Virus record (IMG/VR): IMGVR_UViG_3300043446_005562
Coordinates: 188,619-252,618 of that record
Length of the DNA: 64,000 bases
Direction: 5' to 3' (one strand)
The notes beneath the pieces were generated by a model. It was not told the origin of the DNA, did not search any database, and saw nothing but the letters and a program-made list of their open reading frames with translations. Shown here piece after piece: positions 26,409-38,778 of this stretch (positions are counted from its first letter, which is position 1; every line of letters begins with the position of its first letter). A program made the translations under genes and the position numbers.

Positions 26409-27121
26409 TATTTCCAGTAGTTTTGGTCCTTGTAAAAATAGGATTCGTTATTGCGATTAAGCCAATTTCTAAAAACCAGGCCTATCATTTTAAAGTACCC
26501 GTATCTTTTAAACCTTCGATTATCCTGCGTAATTAAATCCGGTACGAGCTTGAATTTTTTTGGCTTGATCTTTCGACTTAGCAGCCAATCTTCGCTTTGA
26601 TGAGCGGCTTCGTCAAATCCTCCAAGTTCTAAAAATATGAGTCGCCTAACGAGTATAAAACCGCCTATTGCAAACGGTTTCGTTTTGGAAAGGTACCATG
26701 TGACTAGTCGATTAATGCTAAATATTAATTTAGCTCGAATGTCAAACTCACCACGATATTTTGGACAAGTTCCAATCATTGCCAAATTTTCATTCATTAA
26801 GCAGGTTAGCGCTCGTGAGACGACCGTTTTATCAGTAAATGTAATATCCGCATCAATGAACAGCAGATATGGTGTGGTAGCGAGGTCCGCGCCGGCATTA
26901 CGGCCAACCGCCGGTAATCCTCCCTTAACTATCTCAACTCTTAGATCAAGTTGCTTCTTTAACTTTTCAATGATGCTGAGGGTTGAGTCAACTGAGCCAG
27001 CGTCCGCAATTATTATTCTCACGCCTTCCGTACCAAGCTGTCTTTTAATATGTCGAAGAGTTCTGCCAATATAGAGCTCTTCGTTGTAGCATGGAATGAC
27101 GATTGTGAGCAGATCCTGCAT
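26408..27121 (-). CDS. Glycosyltransferase family 2
   Basis: IVIPCYNEE, DAGSVD, GRNAGA, FIDAD, GGFDE, SED. Confidence 0.9.
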   Translation of the reverse strand: MQDLLTIVIPCYNEELYIGRTLRHIKRQLGTEGVRIIIADAGSVDSTLSIIEKLKKQLDLRVEIVKGGLPAVGRNAGADLATTPYLLFIDADITFTDKTVVSRALTCLMNENLAMIGTCPKYRGEFDIRAKLIFSINRLVTWYLSKTKPFAIGGFILVRRLIFLELGGFDEAAHQSEDWLLSRKIKPKKFKLVPDLITQDNRRFKRYGYFKMIGLVFRNWLNRNNESYFYKDQNYWK

Positions 27122-27816
27122 TAGATGAATAGGGTTAATTTTTGAGAATTTAGATTAAATCCAGAAGTTTCGTATATTACGTACGAAGTATTTTCAATCC
27201 AGTCACCGGTATTTAGATAGCGAACTCCATCGATCTGTTTGTCGGCCGGCGTATGAATGTGACCGCAGATAACCGTATGACAATTTCTCTTTTTTGCTTG
27301 CCTTACCATTTCATTTTCAAAGTCGGTCATGAAAGAGATAGCCGCTTTGACATTATCCTTTAGGTATTTGGATAGGCTTGTCTTTTTATTAAACTTCTTT
27401 AGTAGTCTATCGATTACTATTGCTAAATCGTAACCGATTGAGCCAAGCATGCCTAACCAGTGCATCTTTACAATACCATCATAGCGATCACCATGACAAA
27501 ACCAGATACCGGCCTCACAAAATTCGTCAACTACCTTTATTCCACCTATCGTAACTGGTAAATATTCTCTAAGAAATTCATCGTGATTGCCAGCGATCCA
27601 GATAACCTCATGCTCCTTTGAGACCTTTAATAACTTTCTAATGAGGCGAGTGTGTTCAACCGAAAATTTCTTGTACTTTTTAAACAACCAACCGTCAATT
27701 ATATCGCCGACCAGAATCAATCGGTCGAATTCGGTATTTTTTAGTAGTGCTATTACACCCTCGGTATTACAACCTTTAGAGCCAATGTGAACGTCCGATA
27801 TTACTAGAGTTTTCAT
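27121..27816 (-). CDS. LpxH-like (UDP-2,3-diacylglucosamine hydrolase family) metallophosphoesterase
   Basis: SDVHIG, GDIIDGW, GNHD, HGD, CGHIH, YLNTGDW. Confidence 0.8.
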   Translation of the reverse strand: MKTLVISDVHIGSKGCNTEGVIALLKNTEFDRLILVGDIIDGWLFKKYKKFSVEHTRLIRKLLKVSKEHEVIWIAGNHDEFLREYLPVTIGGIKVVDEFCEAGIWFCHGDRYDGIVKMHWLGMLGSIGYDLAIVIDRLLKKFNKKTSLSKYLKDNVKAAISFMTDFENEMVRQAKKRNCHTVICGHIHTPADKQIDGVRYLNTGDWIENTSYVIYETSGFNLNSQKLTLFI

Positions 27817-27818
27817 AA

Positions 27819-28130
27819 TTAATCCTTTTCCCAGCCTTCCTCGGCATGGTCATATTCACAGCAGGGAAACTGTCGACCCTTATCGTCAACGTGAGTCCAA
27901 ACCTTGCCTTCCTTAATCCATACCCAAGGTTCATCCGATTTTCCCGGAAGTTCAGGTCTTTCTAAAGGCGGATGATAGGCATTTACGTCAGTGTGTCTGT
28001 GATTACATTCACAACCTCTTGGAACGCAATCATCACAAGAATAGTCGTTCTCTTTGCTTGAATATCCGGGCAAGTAAACCCAGGTTGCGATCTTACCGCA
28101 ATCGCATAATTCTTTACCAGCTATCAACAT
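27819..28130 (-). CDS. Cys-rich hypothetical protein
   Basis: CDCG, CDDC, GCEC, PCCE. Confidence 0.55.
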   Translation of the reverse strand: MLIAGKELCDCGKIATWVYLPGYSSKENDYSCDDCVPRGCECNHRHTDVNAYHPPLERPELPGKSDEPWVWIKEGKVWTHVDDKGRQFPCCEYDHAEEGWEKD

Positions 28131-28317
28131 CAGTTAAATCTATTTCAGTTCCAGTTAAATGACTAAAGAGACGTAATTCACTACCAATTCCATTCGGTGT
28201 ACATTTCCAAGTAAGTAGCCCAACCTCACCATATATAGCCTTAATATGACTAATCCATTTATCAAACTTCTTCTGCTGCTTGTCATTTAATTCTATAATT
28301 ATTTGTTTATTTGCCAT
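28114..28317 (-). CDS. Hypothetical protein
   Basis: Packed ORF; TPNGIG...DLTDVDSW. Confidence 0.55.
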   Translation of the reverse strand: MANKQIIIELNDKQQKKFDKWISHIKAIYGEVGLLTWKCTPNGIGSELRLFSHLTGTEIDLTDVDSW

Positions 28318-28334
28318 TGCATGTATTTAAAAAG

Positions 28335-28441
28335 TAGTCGGTCCGGGACTCGAACCCGTATGCTGTTGCCAGCGGGGACTTGTACAATCCCTGTGTCTGT
28401 CCATCGGCAGTTGTACACCTGCTCGCTTTCACCACCCGACT
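28335..28441 (-). ncRNA. Aberrant tRNA-like RNA with enlarged D-arm hairpin
   Basis: Acceptor AGTCGG/CCGACT, T-arm CGGG-ttcgagt-CCCG, variable arm GCTG-gcaa-CAGC, anticodon-like GGGAT-tgtacaa-GTCCC, extra GCAG-gtgtacaa-CTGC. Confidence 0.7.
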
Positions 28442-28447
28442 GAAAAA

Positions 28448-28524
28448 TGGAAGAGGGGGGAATCCAACCCACCGTCACGGCCGTTAGGGCTTGCTCTCAT
28501 GTAGTGTCACTGAGCTACTCTTCC
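28448..28524 (-). ncRNA. Degenerate tRNA-like element
   Basis: Acceptor GGAAGAG/CTCTTCC, D-stem GCTC/GAGC with 15-nt loop, irregular anticodon arm, T-loop TTGGATT. Confidence 0.55.
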
Positions 28525-28528
28525 CTTG

Positions 28529-28606
28529 TACCCTCTGAGAGACTCGAACTCTCACCCGAAGACTAGATCCTAAGTCTAGCGCGTCTACCAATTCCGCCAA
28601 GAGGGC
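28529..28606 (-). tRNA. tRNA-Leu(TAG)
   Basis: CTAGA-cttagga-TCTAG; GGCGGAATTGGTAGACGC D-arm. Confidence 0.95.
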
Positions 28607-28617
28607 ATTCTATGAAA

Positions 28618-29043
28618 TTAATCGATTAGTGTTTCCATTTTAAAAGTTACAATCCACCTAGCGCAATCTTGAGGTAGTCGATTAATGTGTTTGTAATTAT
28701 TGATGTATCCCATCATGTTTGCAGACCCAATCGCATTTGCTGAATGTACCATCACTTTACAAACTGGGGCTCCATTCATCCATTGCTCTACTAACCACTT
28801 TGTACAATCCATTCCTGTTTTTTCAGTAATGTTGTCGTAGTTAAGAGTGTAGTTATGATACACGTTGGTGTGCCATTCTTTCATGGCTGAGTCACCTAAG
28901 TCGTGATCTAAGCTAATAAGAGCAATGTTCTCTAATCCAATTTCAGTTACCTTAGCTACAAACTCTTCGTAGTTACGTACTACTGTCCAATCTTCTTTAT
29001 TGATTGGAGTTCTTACGTCGTCTAGGTAAATATTGTATTTCAT
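28618..29043 (-). CDS. Cyclic-phosphate-processing receiver-domain protein
   Basis: IYLDDVRTP, ISLDHDLG, TGMDCTKWL and VHSAN motifs; adjacent to an RNA ligase. Confidence 0.75.
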   Translation of the reverse strand: MKYNIYLDDVRTPINKEDWTVVRNYEEFVAKVTEIGLENIALISLDHDLGDSAMKEWHTNVYHNYTLNYDNITEKTGMDCTKWLVEQWMNGAPVCKVMVHSANAIGSANMMGYINNYKHINRLPQDCARWIVTFKMETLID

Positions 29044-29079
29044 GTAGCTATTATACTAAGTTAAATCAGCTAGGGTTTA

Positions 29080-30159
29080 CTAGTCTCCGCCTTTTAGCAA
29101 AAATTTATTTGAGATTACCTTAAACGAAATTGATCTAACCATATTTCGGATTACCAAACCTTCACGCTCCGTACTTTCACACAGGGCAGATTTGCCCTCG
29201 GCGAACTGCAACAGCTCTTCAATTGTATTGGGCAGTAGAAAATGATTATGAAGCATGGGTACCGTTTCAAGGCCCAATTCATTGATCGTTTTTTCCAATT
29301 GGGCTTTAATGTAGTACTGATGTTCGTCGATATCGAAGATATTAAAGAACTTCAGAGTTTGACCCTTCAGCCTGTATGGATTGCCCTGAATTCCTTCACC
29401 GATAATCTCTCCTTGAAAGGAAACATTTTTACCAAGACTACGCATCTTTGTCTCAAGATCCAATTCTCTGGCAACCTTCCACATTGTGTTGTCTTCAGTC
29501 TCAAGCAGCTCAAGATTTCTAGAACAGATGCCAAATTCGCCATCCTTTACGTAGGCTGTGAAAGAGGATCCATCTAGCTTTTCAGTAACATAGAAGGAGG
29601 TTTTTGTGTAGCCCTCATACTCGTTGGTCAAGTTCTGCACTCGCTCTTCATCTGTTTTTGGAATGAACGATGGAAAAAGACCCTTGGCCACACCAGCTAA
29701 TGAAGCCGGTACCGGCGGTTCATACTTAATGATTCCCAAGTGTTTACTTACATCCAATCCTTCTTCAATCACCAGCGCATCATCGTAAGGCCCCAGTTGT
29801 AGCTGCTCTCCCCATGGCTGTTCACTGACTCCAACGACCATTTCCTCAGCACAGTTTAGAGTTTCAAGCGGTAGGACTAGACCTTGCGATACTTGGCCTC
29901 TGAGCTTAATCGTCTTTAATCGAAAGCCTTCAGAGCCGTCCGCTAATTTTCGATAGGAACTCTTACGTAAGAACTCAAACTCCTCCTTTATTGGCAGGAA
30001 CGAGTCAATTTCGCAATAGATGCACAGATCTCCCGGTTTGTACTCGCCCTTTTTGCAAACGACGTTCCAGTTATTGATCTGTACGACTTCAATCACGTCA
30101 GCTCCTTCGATCGGTCTAACGTCTCTGACTCTTTGAATACTTGCTAATTTTCTTTCCAT
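29080..30159 (-). CDS. RNA ligase, DRB0094 family
   Basis: MERKLASIQ OB-like N-terminus, FPSFIPKTDEERVQN, TEKLDGSS, QGEIIG, EREGLV, SFKVISNKFL. Confidence 0.9.
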   Translation of the reverse strand: MERKLASIQRVRDVRPIEGADVIEVVQINNWNVVCKKGEYKPGDLCIYCEIDSFLPIKEEFEFLRKSSYRKLADGSEGFRLKTIKLRGQVSQGLVLPLETLNCAEEMVVGVSEQPWGEQLQLGPYDDALVIEEGLDVSKHLGIIKYEPPVPASLAGVAKGLFPSFIPKTDEERVQNLTNEYEGYTKTSFYVTEKLDGSSFTAYVKDGEFGICSRNLELLETEDNTMWKVARELDLETKMRSLGKNVSFQGEIIGEGIQGNPYRLKGQTLKFFNIFDIDEHQYYIKAQLEKTINELGLETVPMLHNHFLLPNTIEELLQFAEGKSALCESTEREGLVIRNMVRSISFKVISNKFLLKGGD

Positions 30160-30161
30160 TT

Positions 30162-30419
30162 TTATTCTTTGTATATTTCGGCAAGTTTGCGTTCTATTTC
30201 ATAACACTTTTCGGATGGAACTCCATCTGCGTAAAATCTAAATGAATTGAACTTGCTCTTGATTTGACTGAACTTAAAATCCGGTAATTTGCTTAGGCTC
30301 TCAAACTCCGCGTCTAAATACTCAATTACTTCCGGTTTATCTAGTGCAAGCCCATAGTGGCCCTTTTTTAAAAAGGCACCCCACTTTTTGTTAAACTCAT
30401 CAGAGGTTGTAGGTTTCAT
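30162..30419 (-). CDS. Hypothetical protein
   Basis: QIKSKF..FRFY motif. Confidence 0.55.
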   Translation of the reverse strand: MKPTTSDEFNKKWGAFLKKGHYGLALDKPEVIEYLDAEFESLSKLPDFKFSQIKSKFNSFRFYADGVPSEKCYEIERKLAEIYKE

Positions 30420-30445
30420 ATATCGTTTTTAATAATTTAATTGTA

Positions 30446-30706
30446 CTAAAAAGGCAGTGGTCGGGTTTCCCAATCCGAGTAAGAGGTCCATTCGACAAGA
30501 TCGTCAACTTGACCCTCTTCGATCACATGAGCGACCATAATCTCCTGCTTCTCATTCTTTCCGACTGCGACCATTCTGCAGCCTTCACATAGAACAGGCA
30601 TGTAAGTATTTGGTTCAAGGGACTCAGCTATTTTCTGAACGTCTATTTCCGGTTCAAAATCTTCGCCCCACATTTCGGTTGCGCATCGATTACAAAAGTC
30701 TGCCAT
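30446..30706 (-). CDS. Small zinc-binding hypothetical protein
   Basis: FCNRC...LCEGC. Confidence 0.55.
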   Translation of the reverse strand: MADFCNRCATEMWGEDFEPEIDVQKIAESLEPNTYMPVLCEGCRMVAVGKNEKQEIMVAHVIEEGQVDDLVEWTSYSDWETRPLPF

Positions 30707-30707
30707 A

Positions 30708-31211
30708 TTATTGTCTGTTTAAAATTTTAAGAGCGTAGCCGTTGATCATAGGTCTGCCTGTGTTATAACAGCCCAGCACCAGACCCCAATCGCCGTACTT
30801 TTTATAGAGGTTTGAGAGCAGCTTCATTGAGATCTTTACATTTAATTCCAAGTCGTTTAATAGCTGCTTTGAAGTAATTTGTTTGCCCCAAGTTGCGGTT
30901 GCGGTCGGCACCTGAATCTGCATTGCACCGTAGGCATGAGCTGAAGACACAAGTTTTGGATTGTATCCCCAGTCGAATGGGCCGTGATAGCCGCTTTCAG
31001 TTTCAGCAACGCCCATCGCAATGTTGAAGGGTACGTTGTACTGCTTTGAGTAGGTCTGCAGATAATCGTACAGCCTAATACAAGGTGGCGCTTTTTTTAG
31101 TGAAACTTTGGAGAGATCTAGGGTTCTATCCCCGTGCTTAGCTGTTTCGTAAGACCAGGCTGCGCCAAATAATAACAGCACTCCAAAGATTAGAGTTGAT
31201 CTTAGTGACAT
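30708..31211 (-). CDS. Lytic transglycosylase (SLT domain) with signal/anchor
   Basis: AETESG, AYGAMQI, YNTG. Confidence 0.85.
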   Translation of the reverse strand: MSLRSTLIFGVLLLFGAAWSYETAKHGDRTLDLSKVSLKKAPPCIRLYDYLQTYSKQYNVPFNIAMGVAETESGYHGPFDWGYNPKLVSSAHAYGAMQIQVPTATATWGKQITSKQLLNDLELNVKISMKLLSNLYKKYGDWGLVLGCYNTGRPMINGYALKILNRQ

Positions 31212-31534
31212 TACTTCGCGATTTGGTCATACTTCCTAGAAGCATAAAGGTTAAAAATCATTAGTCCTACCGAATCTTGATACACGGTGTAGGTACCGTC
31301 CGCTCTATCGATTACAAGAAGTTCATTGCGCTCGTTGATCGCAACTGAGGTTGTGGATAGAGGTTTTGTATTCTTAAGTGGGGATTTCTTTGCGTGACTC
31401 ATCATTACCCAATAGTAATAGCCAATAAAGAATCCAGTTATCATTGCGACCGCAACAATAAGCAGATTACCAAGTTTCTTTGCAAAGACGTTTAAACGAG
31501 CCAATGCATTCGTGATCATGAGTTTCTTGTCCAT
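31211..31534 (-). CDS. Membrane protein
   Basis: Single TM helix; coupled to the SLT gene. Confidence 0.55.
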   Translation of the reverse strand: MDKKLMITNALARLNVFAKKLGNLLIVAVAMITGFFIGYYYWVMMSHAKKSPLKNTKPLSTTSVAINERNELLVIDRADGTYTVYQDSVGLMIFNLYASRKYDQIAK

Positions 31535-31590
31535 AACTTTGTTTTATAGGTTTAAAACTATTATACTAAAAAATGGGGCGAGCGGTCTTT

Positions 31591-31971
31591 TTAGTATTCT
31601 TTTGGACTTTCGATGTCCTTTAAGTCTGGAAATTTAGTGTACAGTTTATGATAGATTCTGTCAAATCTGCGATCCTGATCCCGTTGAAATCGATCGCCCG
31701 CTTCAAATACATTGCGCTGAATGTTTGATTGTTCTTCTCGAATGGATCTAAATTCCCATTCAAGATTCTTTCGAATCTCTTCAGTGTTCTCTTCCAATCT
31801 TCGATAAAGATCTTCCCGAACTGAATGAAGTGTGTTAGCAAGACCTGTTAGATCATTACTTAATTGATTGTTGATTGCTTGTGCCTTACGTAACCCCAAC
31901 CCAATCCATCCAAGATAGATTACGGCCAAAGTGCCTAGTACGCTCAACACGACAGTTGAAATTATTGTCAT
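31591..31971 (-). CDS. N-terminal TM plus coiled-coil protein
   Basis: Hydrophobic N-terminus, heptad-rich body; bracketed by a 10-bp inverted repeat. Confidence 0.6.
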   Translation of the reverse strand: MTIISTVVLSVLGTLAVIYLGWIGLGLRKAQAINNQLSNDLTGLANTLHSVREDLYRRLEENTEEIRKNLEWEFRSIREEQSNIQRNVFEAGDRFQRDQDRRFDRIYHKLYTKFPDLKDIESPKEY

Positions 31972-32033
31972 ATATTTAGGGTGTTTTTAGTGCTCGCCCC
32001 AAATATTTTACTCTATCGTAAACTTAGGTTTTG

Positions 32034-32888
32034 TTAAAAGCCGTTGGTTGAAGTGTTATAAAAAACTTTACCAGTCACGTCGGTCGTCTTGGTGATGGTC
32101 GGCGTTGAATAGTTAAAGGTTAATACATCACCGCCTGTGTTCTCTCCGAATTGAATTCTAATTGGATAATAAGTGCCGGACGTTAAAGCAACTGAGCCGG
32201 ATCTTTCAACCGTTCCATGGAGTCCTCCATTATTCACAGTTGCATTGCCTGTGGTAAAGCCGCTAATTGCATTACTTCCAACCCAAACATAGGAAGCATC
32301 ATCGCTTGATGTGTAAAAGGTATAGGTTTCAGTCGTAGTTGGTTTAAAATAACCCAACCATTGACAACTAAATACTTCTCCATCATTTGAGGATGGTTCG
32401 GAAATCACTGTAGTTTGAACTGATGTTGCCGGGTTAGCACCGAATGTCGTTGGCGTAGCGGTCGCAAAAAAGCTTACGTTATCACTAAAATATCCAGAAT
32501 AGGTTGTTTTGTAGAGACCCGCTGCATACGGTACAAATGTTGTAAAATAATTATTGGTATTCAACCAATCATACGCCAATTGAGCTGTTGCAAAGGGTCC
32601 ACTTGCGCCAGCAACAGCATTTGCAATACTTAAAAAACTTGCATCTGTCAAGCTACTCGATCTCCAAAAACCAACGGTTCCGTTGTTCAGGCCGTTTGGT
32701 GTGGGCTGATTTGCTGCAGCAACGTCCTTTGCGATAATATAGCCCAGTGATTCGTCTGGACCCATCCACCAGGTAAGACCGGTCGCGCCAAAGCCGGCGC
32801 TTGGGGTACCGTATGCCAGGTTTCCAAGCTGGGTTGTTCCGCCGATTGCGGCGCCAGTATTACGAGTGAAGGGTCGTGATGTTGCCAT
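32034..32888 (-). CDS. PA14-domain (carbohydrate-binding) putative virion protein
   Basis: FSCQWLGYFKP...YTFYTSSDDAS...NNGGLHG...YYPIRIQFGE; late-promoter-like AATAAATA at 32911-32918. Confidence 0.8.
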   Translation of the reverse strand: MATSRPFTRNTGAAIGGTTQLGNLAYGTPSAGFGATGLTWWMGPDESLGYIIAKDVAAANQPTPNGLNNGTVGFWRSSSLTDASFLSIANAVAGASGPFATAQLAYDWLNTNNYFTTFVPYAAGLYKTTYSGYFSDNVSFFATATPTTFGANPATSVQTTVISEPSSNDGEVFSCQWLGYFKPTTTETYTFYTSSDDASYVWVGSNAISGFTTGNATVNNGGLHGTVERSGSVALTSGTYYPIRIQFGENTGGDVLTFNYSTPTITKTTDVTGKVFYNTSTNGF

Positions 32889-32913
32889 CCAGTAACTAGA
32901 TCTTTCTAGTTAT

Positions 32914-34005
32914 TTATTCTTCTTGATTCCAGAAAGGTTTTTGATAATCTGGTCGAATCTGCTTCCAGATCTGCTGACTGGGATCCCGACCGTTCAGCAA
33001 GCAGAATAGGGTGCTCCAAGCGGTTTGCGGAACATTTTCTTGAATCCACAAGGCCTCGTCCTTTCTGGTCTTGAAACCCTGTTCAGATAATTGATTTAGA
33101 TAATTTTGCGCAGACCTCATTCGCATGACATGTGCAACTTTTAGGGCAGCCTCCCACTGTCTAACCCATGCATCAAATTCATCGGGCACCATCTCTAAAA
33201 ATTGATCAAGTTCTTCGCCCCGGCTCAGGTGCTCCCAAATATCGACATTAGAAAAATTGGTCAAGAGCCGGTGCAATCGAACGTATTCTTCGAATTTAAT
33301 CTTCATTCTAAAATTTCCGGGCTGGAATCTTAGAACAAAACCTTCAGCCTTTCTAGTATTCATGGCCTTTAGGCTTTCATAGAGTTCAGGACTAAAATTA
33401 AAATGTTGCTCAGTTTTTACCAGATCAGATTTGCTAATTCCGTTTGACCTAAAAAAAGCGCACGCGGTTGTCCAGTGCAATTCAGTACCCTCAGAGATGG
33501 CGCTCAGAAAAACCACCCTGGGCTTGGAACCGTAATCAACAACTATACGATTCTTGGGATAGATGATTTCGCACAAGTAGGTTACTCGACGCTCAAATTG
33601 ACGTAGTCCAAAATATTTCTCTTTTAGAATTTTTAAACCCTCAACTGCCTGATCCGAATGAAATGAACCTCGAGTGGCCATGTGCCAGGCGTCAGCATAA
33701 TAGAATAGAATTCCCAATGAGCCGTCCATTTTTTGCTGCACATAAACGTAATCACCTTTGACTGGAATTTGACCAGTCTGCGCAGCCTCCTCGTAATTAA
33801 AGAATTTATTGAAACCCCTAGCCACAATCTCGCCTGAATCATCCATGATGAGACCTCGACACTGTAGAGTCACTTCATCCCATGCCGAATCGTATTGGCA
33901 TTTTCTAGAGTAATTGTAAATTGTCAACGGTAATTTGTTATGCCGATTGGCAACGACCAATCCACGGTTGACGTAATCCTTTAAGATAGTTTGAGTTAGG
34001 GTCAT
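32914..34005 (-). CDS. RNA ligase 1 (T4 RnlA-like)
   Basis: CRGLI, FNKFFNY, KMDGSLG, ATRGSF, NRIVVDY, EGFV, KIKFEEY. Confidence 0.9.
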   Translation of the reverse strand: MTLTQTILKDYVNRGLVVANRHNKLPLTIYNYSRKCQYDSAWDEVTLQCRGLIMDDSGEIVARGFNKFFNYEEAAQTGQIPVKGDYVYVQQKMDGSLGILFYYADAWHMATRGSFHSDQAVEGLKILKEKYFGLRQFERRVTYLCEIIYPKNRIVVDYGSKPRVVFLSAISEGTELHWTTACAFFRSNGISKSDLVKTEQHFNFSPELYESLKAMNTRKAEGFVLRFQPGNFRMKIKFEEYVRLHRLLTNFSNVDIWEHLSRGEELDQFLEMVPDEFDAWVRQWEAALKVAHVMRMRSAQNYLNQLSEQGFKTRKDEALWIQENVPQTAWSTLFCLLNGRDPSQQIWKQIRPDYQKPFWNQEE

Positions 34006-34410
34006 TTATAATTTAATTTCAAAACGAGCTCTCATCTGCTCTACTTTTTCAGCCGGCACTCCATGAGAATTAATGCCACCGTGCCTATTTTCAACAATGA
34101 TTGAGAAAACTCGATAGTTCCATTCCTTTGCTAAATCGTAATAGGCTTGCATTTCCCACTCTTGAGTAAATGTATTCGAGACCACAATCACGGAATTTTG
34201 ACCGGTTGTGTGATTTAGTATCATGGCGGTTTCCACATCACCATAACACCACTGATGAGCCTCCTTTAATTTAGAGGCATCGAATCGATATTCGCTATTC
34301 TCATCCAAGAAAAATCTGTCTGTTTCAAAATGAGAACCTCCAAGCTCTTTAGCTAGTGTTGATTTGCCCGCACCCGGCAAACCTCGTAAAAGAAATAGTG
34401 TCTTTGTCAT
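34006..34410 (-). CDS. P-loop kinase (polynucleotide-kinase-like, AAA_33)
   Basis: LRGLPGAGKST, VSNTF, HGVP...MRARFE; abuts Rnl1. Confidence 0.8.
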   Translation of the reverse strand: MTKTLFLLRGLPGAGKSTLAKELGGSHFETDRFFLDENSEYRFDASKLKEAHQWCYGDVETAMILNHTTGQNSVIVVSNTFTQEWEMQAYYDLAKEWNYRVFSIIVENRHGGINSHGVPAEKVEQMRARFEIKL

Positions 34411-34441
34411 GCTATTTTAGTTAATGATATTATACTAAAAG

Positions 34442-34523
34442 TGGGAGTAGGTGGACTCGAACCACCGAACTCAGAAGAGGAGGGATTTACAGTCCCTTGC
34501 AATTGCCGCTATGCGATACTCCC
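34442..34523 (-). tRNA. tRNA-Tyr(GTA)
   Basis: AGGGA-ctgtaaa-TCCCT; long variable arm. Confidence 0.95.
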
Positions 34524-34663
34524 AAAATAAGGAAAGGGGAAGATGGTTGTGTGGACGACCCCTTTTACGATTGGCTTTACTCTGCTAATGATCTGCCAAC
34601 TCCGATGCTGCCAGTCGACCATTAGTCTCAAACTATTGACAGCTCATTCCCCAATCAACCTTG

Positions 34664-34738
34664 TCGGGGTGGCAGGATTCGAACCTACGACCTCCTGCTC
34701 CCAAAGCAGGCGCGATAACCGGACTACGCTACACCCCG
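34664..34738 (-). tRNA. tRNA-Pro(TGG)
   Basis: CCTGC-tttggga-GCAGG. Confidence 0.95.
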
Positions 34739-34820
34739 AAAATCAATACGCTTTCGCCCCCTGTATGGCGTATTACTGATGCTTAAGGTCGGCCTTAACC
34801 GTTAAGGGAGCCACCAGTTG

Positions 34821-34893
34821 AGCGGATGGCGAGAATCGAACTCGCATCTCCAGCTTGGAAGGCTGGAGTAATAAGCCATTATACGACATCCGC
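34821..34893 (-). tRNA. tRNA-Gly(TCC)
   Basis: CCAGC-cttccaa-GCTGG. Confidence 0.95.
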
Positions 34894-34900
34894 TTATTTG

Positions 34901-34973
34901 AGCGGGAGACCGGGTTCGAACCGGCGACCTCAACCTTGGCAAGGTTGCGCTCTACCAACTGAGCTACTCCCGC
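34901..34973 (-). tRNA. tRNA-Gly(GCC)
   Basis: CAACC-ttgccaa-GGTTG. Confidence 0.95.
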
Positions 34974-35160
34974 AATTGGGTAGGATCAGACGTGTTCTGC
35001 CTACTAGGCAGGTCTGCCTACCGAGACCTCGTCGTTAACTTTCGTCAGAGCGTACCGAGACACCATTTGTTTTTCGACTTGAGGTAGTCACGGCCGCCTC
35101 TGGTCCTCTCAAGTCTATTTCGTATCGTGGCAAGATGCGGCTCGACCCTGATACGCTGTG

Positions 35161-35233
35161 AGCCTCCTGCCGGGATCGAACCAGCGACCTACTGATTACA
35201 AATCAGTTGCTCTACCAGCTGAGCTAAGGAGGC
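35161..35233 (-). tRNA. tRNA-Thr(TGT)
   Basis: ACTGA-tttgtaa-TCAGT. Confidence 0.95.
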
Positions 35234-35316
35234 AAGATGAACCGTCACAGTGGTTCAGTCTGGTCATTTTCTTCTTCAGTCATCGGTAAACCGCGACCTT
35301 CTGACGGTGACATCCA

Positions 35317-35393
35317 TGGTGGACCGTGAGAGACTCGAACTCTCGACCCCCTGCGTGCAAGGCAGGTGCTCTAGCCAACTGAGCTAACAGCCC
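35317..35393 (-). tRNA. tRNA-Ala(TGC)
   Basis: CCTGC-cttgcac-GCAGG; G3:U70; CCA. Confidence 0.95.
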
Positions 35394-35399
35394 ATTTTG

Positions 35400-35471
35400 T
35401 AGCCCGTACGAGAATCGAACTCGTCTCTCATCCGTGAAAGGGATGCGTCCTAACCGATAGACTAACGGGCC
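35400..35471 (-). tRNA. tRNA-Glu(TTC)
   Basis: CATCC-ctttcac-GGATG. Confidence 0.95.
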
Positions 35472-35593
35472 AAATAAAAACATAATACTACTTTAATAGC
35501 GCTTACCCAATTTTACAACAGAGCGCGTTACCTTGCTAGACCGTTATTGGGCAACGACTTCTAACAATCCTACCTACCCATATTATGTTTTTG

Positions 35594-35665
35594 CGGTCCC
35601 ACCGGGAATCGAACCCGGCACTTTGCCGTGACAGGGCAATATTATAGCCGATTAACTATGAGACC
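35594..35665 (-). tRNA. tRNA-Asp(GTC)
   Basis: TTGCC-ctgtcac-GGCAA. Confidence 0.95.
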
Positions 35666-35864
35666 TTTTGCTCCTTATAAATCCTTCCCGTGCACAGAAC
35701 AAGAAACTGGGGAGACGTTGTTTCTACTTTTATGAAAGGCTTGGGTACCCTCTCCCACCGTTTCGCAGGTTGAAGCGTCCATCTCCACGCCGTCCCTGTG
35801 GAACTACAGTGGCTGGTTGTTGCGGCATGCTGCGCTGTGATGGAACATTCGCACAAGCATTGAC

Positions 35865-35939
35865 TGGTTGCGGGTGCTGGAATCGAACCAGCGATCTTTG
35901 GGTTATGAGCCCAACGAGTTACCATTTCTCCGACCCGCG
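35865..35939 (-). tRNA. Initiator tRNA-fMet(CAT)
   Basis: C1:A72 mismatch, three G:C pairs in the anticodon stem, CCA. Confidence 0.9.
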
Positions 35940-35944
35940 ATGTG

Positions 35945-36015
35945 TTGTCCCGCAAGGATTCGAACCTCAATTCTCTGGACCAAAACCAGATGTGCTGCCG
36001 TTACACCACAGGACA
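35945..36015 (-). tRNA. tRNA-Gln(TTG)
   Basis: TCTGG-ttttggt-CCAGA. Confidence 0.95.
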
Positions 36016-36027
36016 ATTTACTATCTC

Positions 36028-36043
36028 CAATACGTCAAAGAAC
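36028..36043 (-). promoter_or_regulatory. boxA-like antitermination element
   Basis: GTTCTTTGACGTATTG downstream of an internal TATAAT (about 36065-36070). Confidence 0.55.
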
Positions 36044-36086
36044 CTAATTCTCTTTGTATAGAATATTATACTATATTCCAGAGATC

Positions 36087-36160
36087 TGGCACGAGTGGAG
36101 AGATTCGAACTCCCATCAACGGTTTTGGAGACCGGTATGCTACCATTGCACCACACACGT
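36087..36160 (-). tRNA. tRNA-Trp(CCA)
   Basis: CGGT-ctccaaa-ACCG; CCA end. Confidence 0.9.
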
Positions 36161-36164
36161 ATTT

Positions 36165-36241
36165 TGGTTGGAATAGTAGGATTTGAACCTACGACCTCAT
36201 GAGTATCAGTCATGCGCTCTAACCAACTGAGCTATATTCCA
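36165..36241 (-). tRNA. tRNA-Ile(GAT)
   Basis: CATGA-ctgatac-TCATG; CCA end. Confidence 0.9.
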
Positions 36242-36244
36242 ATT

Positions 36245-36320
36245 TGGTGGTGCGGGGCAGGATCGAACTGCCGACACCAGGATTTTCAGTCCTGTGCTCT
36301 ACCGTCTGAGCTACCGCACC
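36245..36320 (-). tRNA. tRNA-Phe(GAA)
   Basis: CAGGA-ctgaaaa-TCCTG; CCA end. Confidence 0.95.
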
Positions 36321-36324
36321 GGGT

Positions 36325-36360
36325 AAAACAAAAAACCTCGAATTTTTTAGGTTCGAGGTT
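36325..36360 (-). terminator. Intrinsic terminator immediately upstream of tRNA-Phe (attenuator terminator)
   Basis: AACCTCGAA-cctaaaaaa-TTCGAGGTT then TTTTGTTTT. Confidence 0.8.
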
Positions 36361-36384
36361 CAGTGTTTCGTAGTTAATATTTCC

Positions 36385-36516
36385 TTAACTTAATCCGCTT
36401 GAACCTCGCAATGCCCCAAAATCTTTAATCGCTTCCGTTGCATTCACAGTAATTGTGCCTGCCGGATACTGATTCCAGTTTTGAGAAATTTTTGATGTGT
36501 TCGCGTAGTTTTGCAC
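36385..36516 (-). CDS. Putative leader peptide of the 13-tRNA operon
   Basis: GTG start after an A-rich leader; MQNYANTSKISQNWNQYPAGTITVNATEAIKDFGALRGSSGLS; contains the antiterminator strand CGAGGTTCA. Confidence 0.7.
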   Translation of the reverse strand: MQNYANTSKISQNWNQYPAGTITVNATEAIKDFGALRGSSGLS

Positions 36517-36537
36517 GGTTTAAGTTTTTTGTCTAGT

Positions 36538-36578
36538 TATTTATAAAGCTATTATACCAACTTTTCGGAAAAAGGTTC
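36538..36578 (-). promoter_or_regulatory. Tandem early-type (GAACC-N17-TATAAT) and late (TATAAATA) promoters of the tRNA operon
   Basis: TATAAT at 36551-36556 with GAACC at 36574-36578; TATAAATA at 36538-36545. Confidence 0.65.
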
Positions 36579-37436
36579 TTAGTGTTGAATAATTTTCTTG
36601 GAGGTTCCGTCATCATACAGATAAATCATGATTTCATCTTTGCGGATATATTGAACCGGCCTGCCTAACATATCAACCACACCAATTAATTTGGGTTCAC
36701 GTTTAGTAAAAGTTTTAATTCCGCTTGTAGTGCAAGTTTCAATTGTAATACGTGTGAAGAAGAATGTATCTTGGTCCAAGCATTTATTATACCATTGAGT
36801 TGCAATCAAGTAATGACCATCATGAGGGAATTTGTATTTGATAATGCGAGCATCATTACCCGGTCCTTTCTGCCAAACCAGATCGCTATCATTAAAATCG
36901 TAATACATGTACAGCTGATCATCACTCATAGAATCCCAGTCGTGCTGATTTAGAGAATCTAGCATAGGTCCATTCCAAATATAAGAATACCACTGCCAAC
37001 AAGTATCGCCTTTCTTCCAAGGACCCAGAGTCATTTCACCAACCATACTATCATTACAGGTTCCGGTAGTACTCTTTAAATTATAGACAAACTTAGAGTT
37101 GGGAAAATAAATCAATTCAATAGGACGATAAATCAGAGTATCGCATCCTTTACAACGGTTTTTCACTACGACACGCAAGTAATACTTACCCTTTTTGTTG
37201 AATTGAACTTCGCAAATACCCCTATACGAATAGACAGTATCTAATTTTTTGGTTTGAAGATCAATTACTGTAAACATGTAATCGACACAAGTATCATCCA
37301 ATACTTGACCGCTTAAATACCATTTGTAAAGGTTACGCTGATTCCATTGTTGAAGTTTTAACGTGCTCCAATCACATTTTGCAGAGGCAGTAGCTGATGC
37401 AACGAAAAGCAGAACTGCTAATAGTAGTTTTTTCAC
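36579..37436 (-). CDS. Secreted protein with tandem PKD/Ig-like modules and T9SS-type C-terminal sorting domain
   Basis: Signal peptide; KLIGVVDMLGRPV...IYLYDDGTSKKII tail; internal repeat F.K.G.Y...N.C..CDT. Confidence 0.7.
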   Translation of the reverse strand: MKKLLLAVLLFVASATASAKCDWSTLKLQQWNQRNLYKWYLSGQVLDDTCVDYMFTVIDLQTKKLDTVYSYRGICEVQFNKKGKYYLRVVVKNRCKGCDTLIYRPIELIYFPNSKFVYNLKSTTGTCNDSMVGEMTLGPWKKGDTCWQWYSYIWNGPMLDSLNQHDWDSMSDDQLYMYYDFNDSDLVWQKGPGNDARIIKYKFPHDGHYLIATQWYNKCLDQDTFFFTRITIETCTTSGIKTFTKREPKLIGVVDMLGRPVQYIRKDEIMIYLYDDGTSKKIIQH

Positions 37437-37491
37437 GCCGATCTTATACTAATCAGCACGCAATAAGTTTTTAATGGAAATGTAAAAAAGA

Positions 37492-38124
37492 TTAGTCTTG
37501 AGTCTGGGCTTCCAGGAAAGAAACTACGTCAGAGTAAATTGTCTCTTTATCTGAATTGCTTACGTCCAGCTCATCAAGCAAATATCCGCGTTCTGGCACC
37601 AGCCTGTTAAAATCGTAGTCCGGTCCGCTACGGCCAAAGAATTCGCCGTGAACTCTAATGTCCCCTGTGTGCGTGACCTCAAGGGAAGTTTTAGCATAAA
37701 CGCTATCCCAATTGTATTCCATCTGACGGCGACATGCGTCTTCATACTCGTATTCGGTCATCTGCTTGTCTTCATCGTGAACCAAATCCTCTTGGCCCAG
37801 CATTCGGATTGCATCTGCTTGAGAACCCGAAGACAATACGTATTCGTCAAACGCAGCCGAAAACCAATTCGCAAGATCATAGTCATAAAGTCTAATCCAT
37901 TGGTATCGCGGTATTCTATCAAATCCAGAGTTTGATAGTAGCAGCATTTGAACATAATCCTCCTCATCAATAAAAATTGAACTCTCGCCTGTCTCCCTAA
38001 CCAGGCTTGCCGCTCTGTGCTCCAGTCTAGTCAATTCGTCAGTAAGACCCAATTGAGCAAGGCGGCCTAATCTGTCCTCGTTCTCGGTTATGAATTGATT
38101 AAATCTCTTAAGGGAATGATTCAC
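37492..38124 (-). CDS. Acidic protein with capsid-targeting-like N-terminus
   Basis: MNHSLKRFNQFITENEDRLGRLAQLGL. Confidence 0.65.
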   Translation of the reverse strand: MNHSLKRFNQFITENEDRLGRLAQLGLTDELTRLEHRAASLVRETGESSIFIDEEDYVQMLLLSNSGFDRIPRYQWIRLYDYDLANWFSAAFDEYVLSSGSQADAIRMLGQEDLVHDEDKQMTEYEYEDACRRQMEYNWDSVYAKTSLEVTHTGDIRVHGEFFGRSGPDYDFNRLVPERGYLLDELDVSNSDKETIYSDVVSFLEAQTQD

Positions 38125-38778
38125 TTAGTATCTGCGTAATTTTGCTAGGGCTCTTTTAGCCGCTTCACCGCGCTCGCGAATGTTGTCCTTTTCCTCTTGT
38201 GACATGTGTTTGTACTGTGCATGCTCAGGATCGGAACCCCAACGCTCAAGGTGATCTAGCGCGCTAACGTCTTGTCGATAGCCGTGTACCAAATCATCAT
38301 TGCTGTCGCCCTCTTCATTGCGGCCTCTACGGTAAGGATAATTACCAGCTCCCTTATGATAACGGCCGTATTCGTACACCTCATCATTTGGATCGTACTC
38401 GTCCTCGTCGTACCAGGTCGCGGGATCAAACTCTTCAGCAACTGCTCTGGTAAATTTTGGATCGGTTTGCAAAAATTCAATGGCTGAGTCAATTTCAGCC
38501 GGATCAGAGGTTTCAACGTATTCGTCGCCTTGTGCAACAGCCAACTGTAGATTGGCAATATTGAAGTCTGAAATTCCATAGAAATCGCCAAGCTCATGAA
38601 AGCCATGGCCCTCTTCTCTCTGTGATGGCGTGTATTCGGTTTCGCCCTCTACCTCGGCTGTGCAAATATAATCACGGCCGTCCATTGTGAATTCAAAATC
38701 TTCAACGGTAATCATTTGGGGTCCGCCGTGATGAGATTCATTCACGAATTGGCCGAAATTTGCTACAAAATTCTTCAT
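38125..38778 (-). CDS. Acidic protein with capsid-targeting-like N-terminus
   Basis: MKNFVANFGQFVNE; GATAAATA at 38798-38805. Confidence 0.65.
   Translation of the reverse strand: MKNFVANFGQFVNESHHGGPQMITVEDFEFTMDGRDYICTAEVEGETEYTPSQREEGHGFHELGDFYGISDFNIANLQLAVAQGDEYVETSDPAEIDSAIEFLQTDPKFTRAVAEEFDPATWYDEDEYDPNDEVYEYGRYHKGAGNYPYRRGRNEEGDSNDDLVHGYRQDVSALDHLERWGSDPEHAQYKHMSQEEKDNIRERGEAAKRALAKLRRY

What the first reader, a model, noticed from the sequence alone, without database searches (positions are those of the whole stretch)
28618..34410. RNA-repair genes placed among the tRNA clusters
Seen: a P-loop kinase and Rnl1-like ligase directly downstream of the 13-tRNA operon, and a DRB0094-family ligase plus cyclic-phosphate receiver-domain protein directly upstream of tRNA-Leu(TAG) and two tRNA-like RNAs. 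Established: T4 Pnk/Rnl1 repair PrrC-cleaved tRNA. Inference: two ligase systems plus inducible tRNA replacement form a layered counter-defence. The kinase lacks the HAD phosphatase of T4 PseT, so 3'-end healing may come from the receiver domain, the HAD at 11875 or the metallophosphoesterase at 46199.
Basis: partly seen in the sequence, partly recalled or inferred. Interest (0 to 1): 0.6.

Follow-up and report, generated by a model that had tools for sequence, protein, structure and literature searches.

The report
Phage tRNA-repair genes beside its tRNAs
An uncultured jumbo phage keeps a 5'-kinase, two RNA ligases and a receiver-like phosphoesterase inside the one island that holds all 19 of its tRNA genes, a layout already predicted for jumbo phages whose cREC enzyme has, as far as I could find, never been tested.

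Summary
On the minus strand, a 134-aa Pnk-like P-loop kinase (34006-34410) starts 30 nt after the 13-tRNA array and abuts a full-length Rnl1-type ligase (32914-34005). An Rnl5 (DRB0094/NgrRnl) ligase (29080-30159) and a cREC protein (28618-29043) end 11 nt before tRNA-Leu(UAG). All 19 tRNAs of the 252.6-kb phage lie within 17.6 kb around these genes.

In 134 related viral loci the same families recur as shuffled cassettes: kin-Rnl1-cREC (21 loci), Rnl1-metallophosphoesterase-kin, cREC-MPE-Rnl5-Rnl1 and kin-HAD-Rnl1. Of 72 loci with kinase plus ligase, 63 also carry cREC, a calcineurin-like esterase or a HAD.

The genome has no 2H, RtcB, PNK3P or CCA-adding gene. A closer metallophosphoesterase at 27121 was missed.

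"Layered" and "inducible" are untested inference. Only one tRNA-like RNA has support, and it scores below Rfam's cut-off.

The Aravind group described the cREC/ligase/kinase/tRNA association in 2021-22, so this is a new member of a known, predicted but biochemically untested kind. Interest is moderate.

The parts
34441..36320 (-). Array of 13 tRNA genes (Phe, Ile, Trp, Gln, Met, Asp, Glu, Ala, Thr, Gly x2, Pro, Tyr).
   Evidence: ARAGORN. All 13 score 55-78 bits on Rfam RF00005. No extra tRNA remnants in the gaps.
34006..34410 (-). Stand-alone Pnk-like P-loop kinase (134 aa), the predicted RNA 5'-OH kinase. It has no phosphatase domain.
   Evidence: PF13671 3e-11, phrog_2071 1e-37, phrog_505 (polynucleotide kinase) 5e-6. 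AF2 model pLDDT 83.6, with Foldseek top hits T4 Pnk, C. thermocellum Pnk and PSTK. Family profile against PDB: Trl1 kinase 9drz 5e-7, T4 Pnk 1ly1 4e-6, with invariant D31 aligned to T4 D35. Invariant G10, P12, G15, K16 and D31 in 41 homologues.
32914..34005 (-). Rnl1-type ATP-dependent RNA ligase (363 aa). Its start codon abuts the kinase stop codon.
   Evidence: PF09511 2e-21. phrog_562 1e-61 covering residues 13-356. T4 Rnl1 2c5u 2e-10. Invariant in 56 homologues: R50, K67/F68, K92-x-D94-G95-S96 (motif I by its alignment to T4 'KEDGSL'; the other motif labels are from memory), E146, E221-G222, K235-x-K237. Below the TIGR02308 equivalog cut-off (60 against 242 bits).
30162..32888 (-). Intervening block that is not RNA repair: a PA14/GLEYA protein, two small membrane-type proteins, an SLT lytic transglycosylase, and two small ORFs (86 and 85 aa).
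   Evidence: Pfam and PHROGs. The same block follows Rnl1 in relatives L002-L007.
29080..30159 (-). Rnl5-family (DRB0094/NgrRnl) nick-sealing RNA ligase (359 aa): N-terminal OB module plus adenylyltransferase domain.
   Evidence: PF21189 3e-41, PF09414 8e-24, TIGR02306 198 bits above its cut-off, 5cot 1e-72. K194-L-D-G-S-S is invariant in 11 homologues.
28618..29043 (-). cREC protein (141 aa): a receiver-fold predicted phosphoesterase and the candidate 3'-end (2',3'-cyclic phosphate) healing enzyme.
   Evidence: PF20274 8e-23. AF2 pLDDT 96. All of the top 50 VIA matches are receiver domains, Z 8-9.9. In 92 diverse representatives D8, D9, R11, D46, H47, D48, T/S76, G77, H100, S/T101, N103 and G106 are invariant or nearly so. 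Adjacent to a ligase in 23 of 80 loci.
28528..28606 (-). tRNA-Leu(UAG), 11 nt downstream of cREC.
   Evidence: ARAGORN and Rfam, 57.8 bits.
28448..28524 (-). tRNA-like RNA 1: has acceptor, D and T arms, but a stunted anticodon arm.
   Evidence: Rfam tRNA 25.8 bits, below the cut-off of 29. Conserved in L002 at the same place. Fold z only -1.5.
28334..28441 (-). Possible tRNA-like RNA 2 (weak): a T-arm and acceptor-like stem followed by a U-run that may act as a terminator.
   Evidence: Fold z -2.4. Terminator-like site at 28356-28340. No relatives in 134 loci, and not called by ARAGORN or Rfam.
28114..28317 (-). Small ORF 'g67' (67 aa) of unknown function that travels with the ligase genes in relatives.
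   Evidence: Lies between Rnl5 and Rnl1, or beside the kinase, in about 10 related loci. No Pfam or PHROG match.
27121..27816 (-). Metallophosphoesterase 'MPE1' (231 aa; weak, sub-cut-off similarity to YfcE, LpxH and PdeM models), 0.8 kb downstream of cREC. A possible second end-healing esterase. Link unproven.
   Evidence: PF12850 1e-13, PF00149 5e-13. NCBIfam hits all below cut-off. Homologues within 6 kb of cREC in 8 of 80 loci.

Best explanation
This is a modular RNA 'heal-and-seal' toolkit embedded in the phage's only tRNA island.

Proposed pathway: host anticodon nucleases leave tRNA halves with 2',3'-cyclic-phosphate and 5'-OH ends. The stand-alone Pnk-like kinase phosphorylates the 5'-OH. 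cREC opens or removes the 2',3'-cyclic or 3'-phosphate, possibly together with a calcineurin-like esterase. The Rnl1-type ligase then reseals breaks in the single-stranded loop. The Rnl5 ligase seals 3'-OH/5'-PO4 nicks in base-paired RNA. The phage's own 19 tRNAs replace what cannot be repaired.

No terminator-like site separates the tRNA array from kinase-Rnl1, or Rnl5-cREC from tRNA-Leu and the tRNA-like RNA. This fits, but does not show, co-transcription.

Shown here: gene identities, intact catalytic motifs, folds, and conserved gene linkage. Inferred: all substrates, the order of the steps, and the biological target.
For: - Family and fold assignments.
- Catalytic motifs are invariant across homologues.
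- All 19 tRNAs and all four genes lie in one 17.6-kb span of a 252.6-kb genome.
- Related viral loci: kin-Rnl1-cREC is contiguous in 21 loci. 43 of 80 cREC loci have Rnl1 or Rnl5 within 6 kb, and in 23 it is adjacent. 42 of 53 Rnl1 loci have the kinase. 28 of 80 cREC loci have tRNAs.
- Of 72 loci with kinase plus ligase, 63 also carry cREC (33), a cassette-type metallophosphoesterase (37) or a HAD (3), and only 9 carry both cREC and that esterase. This pattern fits different esterases filling one role.
- PHROG 8238 is a single profile that the kinase matches at positions 2-109 and the ligase at 418-730, so some phages appear to fuse the two.
- The genome has no 2H, RtcB, PNK3P-HAD or CCA-adding gene that could do the healing instead.
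- No terminator-like site between the tRNAs and the genes.
- Literature: cREC was predicted to process cyclic phosphates and was found linked to RNA ligases, kinases and calcineurin-like esterases in phages (PMC7824862, PMC9503650). Rnl5 enzymes seal nicked duplexes whose 3'-OH strand is RNA (PMC4408790, PMC5397189).
Against: - No activity of cREC has ever been measured; PMC9503650 (2022) calls it experimentally uncharacterized, and my paper searches found no later test.
- cREC is also fused to Nudix and linked to NAD/ADP-ribose enzymes, so it may act on small molecules.
- In this genome cREC sits next to Rnl5, 3.9 kb from kinase-Rnl1, and the cassette-type esterase homologue is about 190 kb away.
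- The kinase lacks counterparts of T4 Pnk R38, and has N where T4 has D85, so its substrate is unproven.
- The Rnl1-like protein is far below the T4 RnlA equivalog cut-off, and its C-terminal domain matches T4 only through a broad PHROG profile.
- The locus samples were chosen by similarity to the window's proteins and are phylogenetically non-independent, so the counts are not probabilities.
- The host and its nucleases are unknown.
Confidence: 0.6

Rival explanations
1. cREC and the metallophosphoesterases are anti-signalling enzymes. They would degrade host immune nucleotides (cyclic ADP-ribose isomers, 2',3'-cyclic or cyclic oligonucleotides) and are merely parked in the same anti-defence island as the ligases. 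End healing for the ligases would then come from elsewhere, or would not be needed.
For: A Tad6 (Thoeris inhibitor) homologue lies in the same island at 39059-39688. MPE2 at 46199 is MPPED2-like (3rl4 3e-45). In cultured jumbo phages cREC lies within genes annotated as Nudix hydrolases, which fits the cREC-Nudix fusions that the literature reports together with links to NAD/ADPr enzymes. 12 of 80 cREC loci show no known repair gene or tRNA nearby. Flavobacterium phage immuto has cREC with two esterases and tRNAs but no ligase within 9 kb.
Against: cREC is directly adjacent to a ligase in 23 of 80 loci and forms kin-Rnl1-cREC cassettes in 21. It largely alternates with esterases placed inside kinase-ligase cassettes. 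These patterns are not expected for an unrelated signalling esterase.
Confidence: 0.2
2. The ligases and kinase serve the phage's own nucleic-acid metabolism rather than counter-defence. Possible roles are processing or quality control of the phage tRNA transcripts, sealing RNA-containing nicks during replication or repair (Rnl5), or a T4 gp63-like tail-fibre attachment role for Rnl1.
For: DraRnl loss sensitises Deinococcus to radiation, and the physiological role of Rnl5 is described as uncharted (PMC5397189). PHROG 562 carries the dual T4 gp63 label. A PA14/GLEYA carbohydrate-binding protein follows Rnl1 here and in relatives. The genes may be co-transcribed with the tRNAs.
Against: None of the 19 tRNAs was called with an intron, so there is no obvious need for splicing-type ligation. 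The consistent pairing of ligase with a 5'-kinase and a phosphoesterase is the signature of repair of 2',3'-cyclic-phosphate/5'-OH breaks, which processing by RNase P or RNase Z does not produce (established biochemistry of T4 Pnkp/Rnl1).
Confidence: 0.15
3. The placement is chance co-location in a plastic accessory region, with no functional link between the two gene pairs or with the tRNAs.
For: The exact adjacency is not conserved. In the closest relative, L002, 2.5 kb separates the tRNA array from the kinase, and an extra gene separates cREC from tRNA-Leu. The kinase of L002 is only 57% identical while Rnl1 is 82% identical, which shows mosaic exchange.
Against: The same families recur together in many different orders across 134 loci and in cultured rV5-like phages, where kinase, phosphoesterase and tRNA array lie together. 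For two independent gene pairs to fall inside 7% of the genome has a chance of about 0.005.
Confidence: 0.05

Closest known systems
Phage T4 Pnkp (PseT) plus Rnl1 (RnlA/gp63) tRNA repair pathway, which counters the PrrC anticodon nuclease
   Same: A Pnk-clade P-loop 5'-kinase with P-loop and catalytic Asp (D31 aligned to T4 D35), and an Rnl1-family ligase with conserved active-site residues including the motif I lysine. Both are phage-encoded. T4 also places small stable RNAs in its tRNA cluster (from memory).
   Different: The kinase is a 134-aa stand-alone protein without the HAD 3'-phosphatase. The phosphatase role is presumably taken by a separate cREC or metallophosphoesterase. The ligase is only distantly related to T4 Rnl1 (60 bits against a cut-off of 242 for TIGR02308). 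A second ligase of the Rnl5 family is present.
cREC-centred RNA-repair and NAD/ADPr neighbourhoods predicted by Iyer, Burroughs, Aravind and co-workers (PMC7824862, 2021; PMC9503650, 2022)
   Same: A cREC protein linked to a T4-like tRNA ligase, a small 'nucleotide kinase', sometimes a calcineurin-like esterase, and tRNA arrays in jumbo or medium phages. That is what is seen here and in the 134 related loci.
   Different: No sirtuin or MazG gene was noted among the ORFs scanned near the repair genes; neither family was searched across the genome. cREC is paired with an Rnl5 ligase. The kinase-Rnl1 pair is separated from Rnl5-cREC by a lysis/adhesin-like block. The published work is prediction only, as is this.
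Bacterial Pnkp (Clostridium thermocellum type: kinase, calcineurin-like phosphoesterase and ligase in one polypeptide)
   Same: The same three chemistries. In relatives of this phage they are encoded as separate adjacent genes in the order Rnl1, calcineurin-like esterase, kinase (15 loci). The kinase model matches CthPnk (4jt2, 4gp6).
   Different: The genes are split, not fused. The ligase is Rnl1-type rather than Rnl4-type. Hen1 was not looked for. In the window itself the cassette-type esterase is not adjacent.
Rnl5 nick-sealing ligases DraRnl and NgrRnl
   Same: Full-length match including the N-terminal OB module, above the curated equivalog cut-off.
   Different: An insertion of about 30 aa between the OB and adenylyltransferase domains. 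The setting is a phage, next to cREC and a tRNA gene.

Membership tests
Rnl1 (T4 RnlA) RNA ligase family | Covalent nucleotidyltransferase motifs with the lysine nucleophile in motif I (KxDGS), plus motifs III, IV and V. | tested here: met
   PF09511 2e-21. K92-x-D94-G95-S96 aligns with T4 'KEDGSL' in the 2c5u alignment. K92/D94/G95/S96, E146, E221/G222 and K235/K237 are invariant in 56 homologues; labelling the last three groups as motifs III, IV and V rests on memory of the T4 enzyme.
Rnl1 (T4 RnlA) RNA ligase family | Rnl1-specific C-terminal domain that gives tRNA specificity, and curated equivalog score. | tested here: inconclusive
   phrog_562 covers residues 13-356. However, the T4 structure and TIGR02308 align only to about residue 265, and the score is 60 against a cut-off of 242. 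The C-terminal part is conserved within the clade.
Rnl1 (T4 RnlA) RNA ligase family | Sealing of 3'-OH/5'-PO4 breaks in the tRNA anticodon loop. | not testable with these tools
   Needs enzyme assays.
Rnl5 (DraRnl/NgrRnl, DRB0094) ligase family | N-terminal OB module fused to a C-terminal adenylyltransferase domain with KxDGSS, and curated equivalog score. | tested here: met
   PF21189 3e-41, PF09414 8e-24, TIGR02306 198.4 bits against a cut-off of 151, 5cot 1e-72 over both domains. K194-LDGSS is invariant.
Rnl5 (DraRnl/NgrRnl, DRB0094) ligase family | Template-dependent sealing of nicks whose 3'-OH strand is RNA. | not testable with these tools
   Property of the characterised members (PMC4408790, PMC5397189).
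T4-type bifunctional Pnkp (PseT) | P-loop 5'-kinase domain of the Pnk clade with the catalytic aspartate. | tested here: met
   Profile against PDB: T4 Pnk 4e-6, Trl1 kinase 5e-7, with D31 aligned to T4 D35. Foldseek top hits are T4 Pnk and CthPnk. The P-loop is invariant. T4 R38 and D85 have no identical counterparts.
T4-type bifunctional Pnkp (PseT) | Fused HAD (DxDxT) 3'-phosphatase domain. | tested here: not met
   The protein has 134 aa and a kinase domain only. PF08645 is absent from the genome.
cREC (PF20274, cyclic-phosphate-processing receiver domain) | Match to the family model, receiver (CheY-like) fold, and conserved acidic pocket. | tested here: met
   81 bits against a cut-off of 27. 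AF2 pLDDT 96. All of the top 50 structural matches are receiver domains. D8, D9 and D46 are conserved, together with invariant H47, D48 and H100.
cREC (PF20274, cyclic-phosphate-processing receiver domain) | Hydrolysis of 2',3'-cyclic phosphate (RNA ends or ADPr>P). | not testable with these tools
   This is a prediction in the literature; PMC9503650 (2022) states that cREC is experimentally uncharacterized, and searches found no later test.
tRNA (Rfam RF00005), for the two 'tRNA-like RNAs' | Score at or above the gathering cut-off, with a cloverleaf including an anticodon arm. | tested here: not met
   The element at 28448-28524 scores 25.8 bits, below 29, and has a stunted anticodon arm. The element at 28334-28441 gets no tRNA hit. 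Neither is called by ARAGORN.

The most novel reading that the evidence does not exclude
cREC is a new class of RNA 3'-end-healing enzyme. It would be a receiver-fold phosphoesterase, with a DD...DHD...T...HS pocket carrying two invariant histidines, that replaces the HAD or calcineurin-like domain of Pnkp. Kinase, cREC and Rnl1 (or Rnl5) would then form a split, mix-and-match tRNA repair pathway. The adjacent anticodon-arm-deficient tRNA-like RNA might be a decoy or cofactor for it.
Probability: 0.4. Interest if true: 0.65.

Novelty: new member of a known kind. Interest (0 to 1): 0.4.

Why it matters
tRNA-cleaving defences such as PrrC, RloC, PARIS, retron/PtuAB, Cas13 and Schlafen-type nucleases are now recognised as widespread. 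Phage answers to them are known experimentally only for T4 repair and for replacement tRNAs.

This locus and its relatives offer a compact set of natural variants: kinase plus cREC, metallophosphoesterase or HAD, plus Rnl1 or Rnl5. Such a set could be used to test whether cREC is an RNA end-healing enzyme. cREC is a very abundant phage protein family, with more than 4,700 clusters at 90% identity, and no measured activity.

The gain would be enzymological and annotational, not a new concept.

Tried and rejected
- Kinase plus cREC complex prediction: score 0.00, tool verdict 'no answer'. It is not evidence either way.
- Megablast against GenBank phages found only tRNA-sized matches, so there is no close cultured relative.
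- Foldseek of cREC against the PDB gave only weak hits (E >= 0.02). The receiver fold was recovered with VIA-align instead.
- A Pfam scan of longer cREC homologues found no informative fusions.
- An Atlas search of g67 was uninformative.
- The promoter and terminator scan showed no enrichment over shuffles.
- I considered reading the high identity of cREC (75-84%, against 35-50% for Rnl1 in the same loci) as unusually strong constraint. I rejected this because those loci were selected by cREC similarity. In Rnl1-selected loci L043 and L044 cREC is 52% identical.
- MPE1 and MPE2 are not orthologues of the cassette-type esterase; they share motif-level similarity only.
- The idea that gaps in the tRNA array hide decayed tRNAs was rejected.

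Full report
**Setting**

The window is the last 64 kb of a 252,618-bp IMG/VR virus record, estimated 93% complete. It is a jumbo phage with 41% G+C. No close relative exists among GenBank phages. The closest cultured match to any of the four proteins is the cREC of Flavobacterium phage immuto, at 78% identity. That is only a weak hint about the host.

All 19 tRNA genes of the genome lie in the window between 22550 and 40169, all on the minus strand.

**Check of the observation**

- Kinase, 34006-34410 (134 aa): AAA_33 3e-11, phrog_2071 1e-37, and weaker matches to the polynucleotide-kinase PHROG 505.
- Rnl1-like ligase, 32914-34005 (363 aa): PF09511 2e-21, phrog_562 (the T4 RnlA/gp63 family) 1e-61 over residues 13-356, and T4 Rnl1 structure 2c5u at 2e-10.
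- Rnl5 ligase, 29080-30159 (359 aa): PF21189 OB module 3e-41, PF09414 8e-24, TIGR02306 at 198 bits (cut-off 151), and Naegleria RNA ligase 5cot at 1e-72 over both domains.
- cREC, 28618-29043 (141 aa): PF20274 8e-23.

The kinase start lies 30 nt after tRNA-Tyr, the last gene of the 13-tRNA array. The kinase stop abuts the ligase start. The cREC stop lies 11 nt before tRNA-Leu(UAG).

The two gene pairs are separated by 2.7 kb. This block holds a PA14/GLEYA protein, two small membrane-type proteins, an SLT transglycosylase and two small ORFs. None is an RNA-repair gene.

No terminator-like site separates the tRNAs from the genes. The only one on this strand near the genes follows the second tRNA-like element.

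**The tRNA-like RNAs**

The element at 28448-28524 has acceptor, D and T arms but only a stub of an anticodon arm. It scores 25.8 bits on the Rfam tRNA model, below the cut-off of 29. It is conserved at the same place in the nearest relative, L002.

The element at 28334-28441 has a T-arm, an acceptor-like stem and a fold z-score of -2.4. It has no relatives, and neither ARAGORN nor Rfam calls it.

**What the proteins are**

Kinase. An alignment of 41 homologues keeps the P-loop (G10, P12, G15, K16) and D31 invariant. The AlphaFold model (pLDDT 83.6) finds T4 polynucleotide kinase first, followed by C. thermocellum Pnk, PSTK and mammalian PNKP. The family profile hits Trl1 kinase domains (5e-7) and T4 Pnk (4e-6), with D31 aligned to the T4 catalytic D35. 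T4 R38 has no counterpart, and T4 D85 corresponds to an invariant Asn. The protein belongs to the polynucleotide-kinase clade, but its substrate is inferred. It has no HAD domain, and PF08645 is absent from the genome.

Rnl1-like ligase. Conserved active-site residues, including the motif I lysine, are invariant across 56 homologues. The protein is a distant member of the family: 60 bits against the T4 RnlA equivalog cut-off of 242. Its C-terminal domain is linked to T4 only through the broad PHROG profile.

Rnl5 ligase. This is a secure family member. Characterised members seal nicks in duplexes whose 3'-OH strand is RNA, and their physiological role is described as uncharted (PMC4408790, PMC5397189).

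cREC. A search of 1.84 billion cluster representatives gave 1,511 relatives. In 92 diverse relatives (30-73% identity), D8, D9, R11, D46, H47, D48, T/S76, G77, H100, S/T101, N103 and G106 are invariant or nearly so. The model is very confident (pLDDT 96). All 50 best structural matches are response-regulator receiver domains, with Z 8-9.9. No solved structure is close.

The conserved residues sit where receiver domains carry their acid pocket: after strand 1, after the third main strand, and after the last main strand. By position (from memory of CheY; not checked on an alignment), a His-Ser pair seems to stand where receiver domains carry their conserved lysine, and a second invariant His follows the Asp at the phospho-acceptor position. 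This arrangement is compatible with phosphoester chemistry. It does not say which chemistry.

**Comparative genomics**

Searches of IMG/VR with the Rnl1-like protein and with cREC fetched 134 loci. The same families recur together in many orders:

| Arrangement | Loci |
|---|---|
| kin-Rnl1-cREC, contiguous | 21 |
| Rnl1-esterase-kin | 15 |
| esterase-kin-Rnl1 | 9 |
| kin-HAD-Rnl1 | 3 |

- Other recurring orders are cREC-esterase-kin-Rnl1, cREC-esterase-Rnl5-g67-Rnl1 and esterase-kin-cREC-Rnl5. Many of all these arrangements lie beside tRNA arrays.
- The 'cassette' esterase is a 215-225-aa calcineurin-like protein (PF00149). Its nearest solved structure is aq_1665, 1xm7.
- A CCA-adding enzyme occurs in 3 loci.

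Counts across the loci:

- Of 80 cREC-anchored loci, 43 have Rnl1 or Rnl5 within 6 kb, and in 23 it is adjacent. 32 have the kinase and 28 have tRNAs.
- Of 53 Rnl1-anchored loci, 42 have the kinase and 31 have the cassette esterase.
- Of 72 loci with kinase plus ligase, 63 also have cREC (33), the cassette esterase (37) or a HAD (3). Only 9 have both cREC and the esterase.

This near-alternation fits different phosphoesterases filling one slot between a 5'-kinase and a ligase. In other words, it looks like a split Pnkp plus ligase. The samples were chosen by similarity and are not phylogenetically independent, so I treat these numbers as strong suggestion, not as statistics.

One contig (covered by loci L005 and L088) has the same split layout as the window: kin-Rnl1, then about 7.7 kb, then Rnl5-cREC. 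The nearest relative, L002, has the same gene order, but with 2.5 kb between the tRNA array and the kinase, and an extra gene between cREC and tRNA-Leu. The neighbourhood is therefore conserved, while the exact adjacency is not.

Cultured rV5-like coliphages carry the same kinase followed by a phosphoesterase, with a sirtuin and a tRNA array a few kb away.

**What could heal 3' ends in this genome**

There is no 2H phosphoesterase, RtcB, PNK3P-type HAD or CCA-adding enzyme. The candidates are these.

- cREC is the best supported, for the reasons above.
- MPE1 (27121-27816) has only weak, sub-cut-off similarity to YfcE, LpxH and PdeM models. It lies 0.8 kb downstream of cREC. Homologues lie near cREC in 8 of 80 loci.
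- A 213-aa esterase about 190 kb away is the nearest homologue of the cassette esterase (30% identity, 5e-7).
- MPE2 (46199-46855) is MPPED2-like (3rl4, 3e-45). It is more likely a nucleotide phosphodiesterase.
- The ORF at 11875-13296 has a HAD domain (DxDxT motif) fused to an NMNAT-like nucleotidyltransferase. It looks like NAD metabolism rather than RNA repair.

**Mechanism proposed (inferred)**

Nucleases that leave 2',3'-cyclic-phosphate and 5'-OH ends are answered by the kinase, cREC (perhaps with an esterase) and Rnl1. Nicks in paired regions, or breaks that already carry 3'-OH and 5'-phosphate, can be sealed by Rnl5. The phage's own tRNAs substitute for host tRNAs.

The window's tRNA set lacks Lys, Asn and Val, which relatives carry. 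For those tRNAs, only repair would be available. Nothing here shows that the tRNAs are inducible, or that the two ligases act as ordered layers.

**Comparison with what is known**

The closest experimentally known system is T4 Pnkp plus Rnl1 countering PrrC (established knowledge). The closest description of this exact gene set is computational. Iyer et al. 2021 (PMC7824862) defined cRec, predicted that it resolves 2',3'-cyclic phosphates, and noted its operonic links to RNA ligases and the tRNA complements of jumbo phages. The 2022 survey (PMC9503650) lists a neighbourhood of T4-like tRNA ligase, cREC, nucleotide kinase and occasional calcineurin-like esterase, and states that cREC is experimentally uncharacterized. 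My literature searches found no later biochemical test.

The finding is therefore a new member of a known, predicted kind. What this analysis adds:

- the explicit catalogue of kinase-X-ligase cassettes, and the alternation of cREC with a calcineurin-like esterase;
- a confident fold and residue map for cREC;
- the pairing of cREC with an Rnl5 ligase next to a tRNA and a tRNA-like RNA.

**Limits**

- The complex prediction for kinase plus cREC gave no answer.
- Read data could not be obtained.

Noticed in passing
window 39059-39688 (-): Homologue of Tad6, a type I Thoeris inhibitor (PF25188, 2e-19), just downstream of tRNA-Ser(UGA) and one small gene (39700-40071). A 59%-identical copy precedes the tRNA array in relative L005. 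This suggests that the tRNA island doubles as an anti-defence island.
   Followed up: partly
Homologues lie within 6 kb of cREC in 8 of 80 related loci.
   Followed up: partly
This is a cyclic-nucleotide/nucleotide phosphodiesterase type and may be an anti-signalling enzyme. Homologues lie near cREC in 5 loci.
   Followed up: partly
The fusion is unusual and its role is unknown.
   Followed up: partly
G000:C1:183476-186430 (-), about 2.2 kb before the window start (L139:2477-5431): A third ligase-domain gene: a 984-aa ORF with an N-terminal RNA_ligase domain (PF09414, 31 bits; phrog_548) and about 730 aa with no match in Pfam, PHROGs or PDB sequences.
   Followed up: partly
window 28114-28317 (-): A 67-aa ORF with no family match. 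It recurs between Rnl5 and Rnl1, or beside the kinase, in about 10 related loci, so it may be an unrecognised accessory of the repair cassette.
   Followed up: partly
window 28334-28441 (-): The second tRNA-like element has two hairpins whose loops both carry the heptamer UGUACAA. One of them could be read as an anticodon-like arm (UAC, Val) with G at position 33. A class II-like extra arm and a U-run terminator follow. The window lacks a tRNA-Val that relatives have. A repeat of this size could arise by chance.
   Followed up: partly
window 32034-32888 (-) and 30708-31971 (-): A PA14/GLEYA carbohydrate-binding protein directly follows the Rnl1-like gene here and in relatives L002-L006. After it come two membrane-type proteins and an SLT transglycosylase, a lysis-like set. 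This is of interest because T4 Rnl1 (gp63) also promotes tail-fibre attachment.
   Followed up: no
loci L003, L007 (tRNA with anticodon UUA); L004, L006 (anticodon UCA): ARAGORN calls suppressor-type tRNAs, reading UAA or UGA, in the tRNA arrays of related phages. The window has none.
   Followed up: no
window 22550-40169: The window's 19 tRNAs lack Lys, Asn and Val, which relatives carry. L002 has Lys(UUU), Asn(GUU) and two extra Met in the same array. The Pro-Tyr gap of 140 nt holds no tRNA remnant.
   Followed up: yes
window 39700-40071 (-): A DUF2452 protein (PF10504, 3e-10). Homologues lie 2-3 kb from cREC in loci L080, L084 and L085.
   Followed up: no
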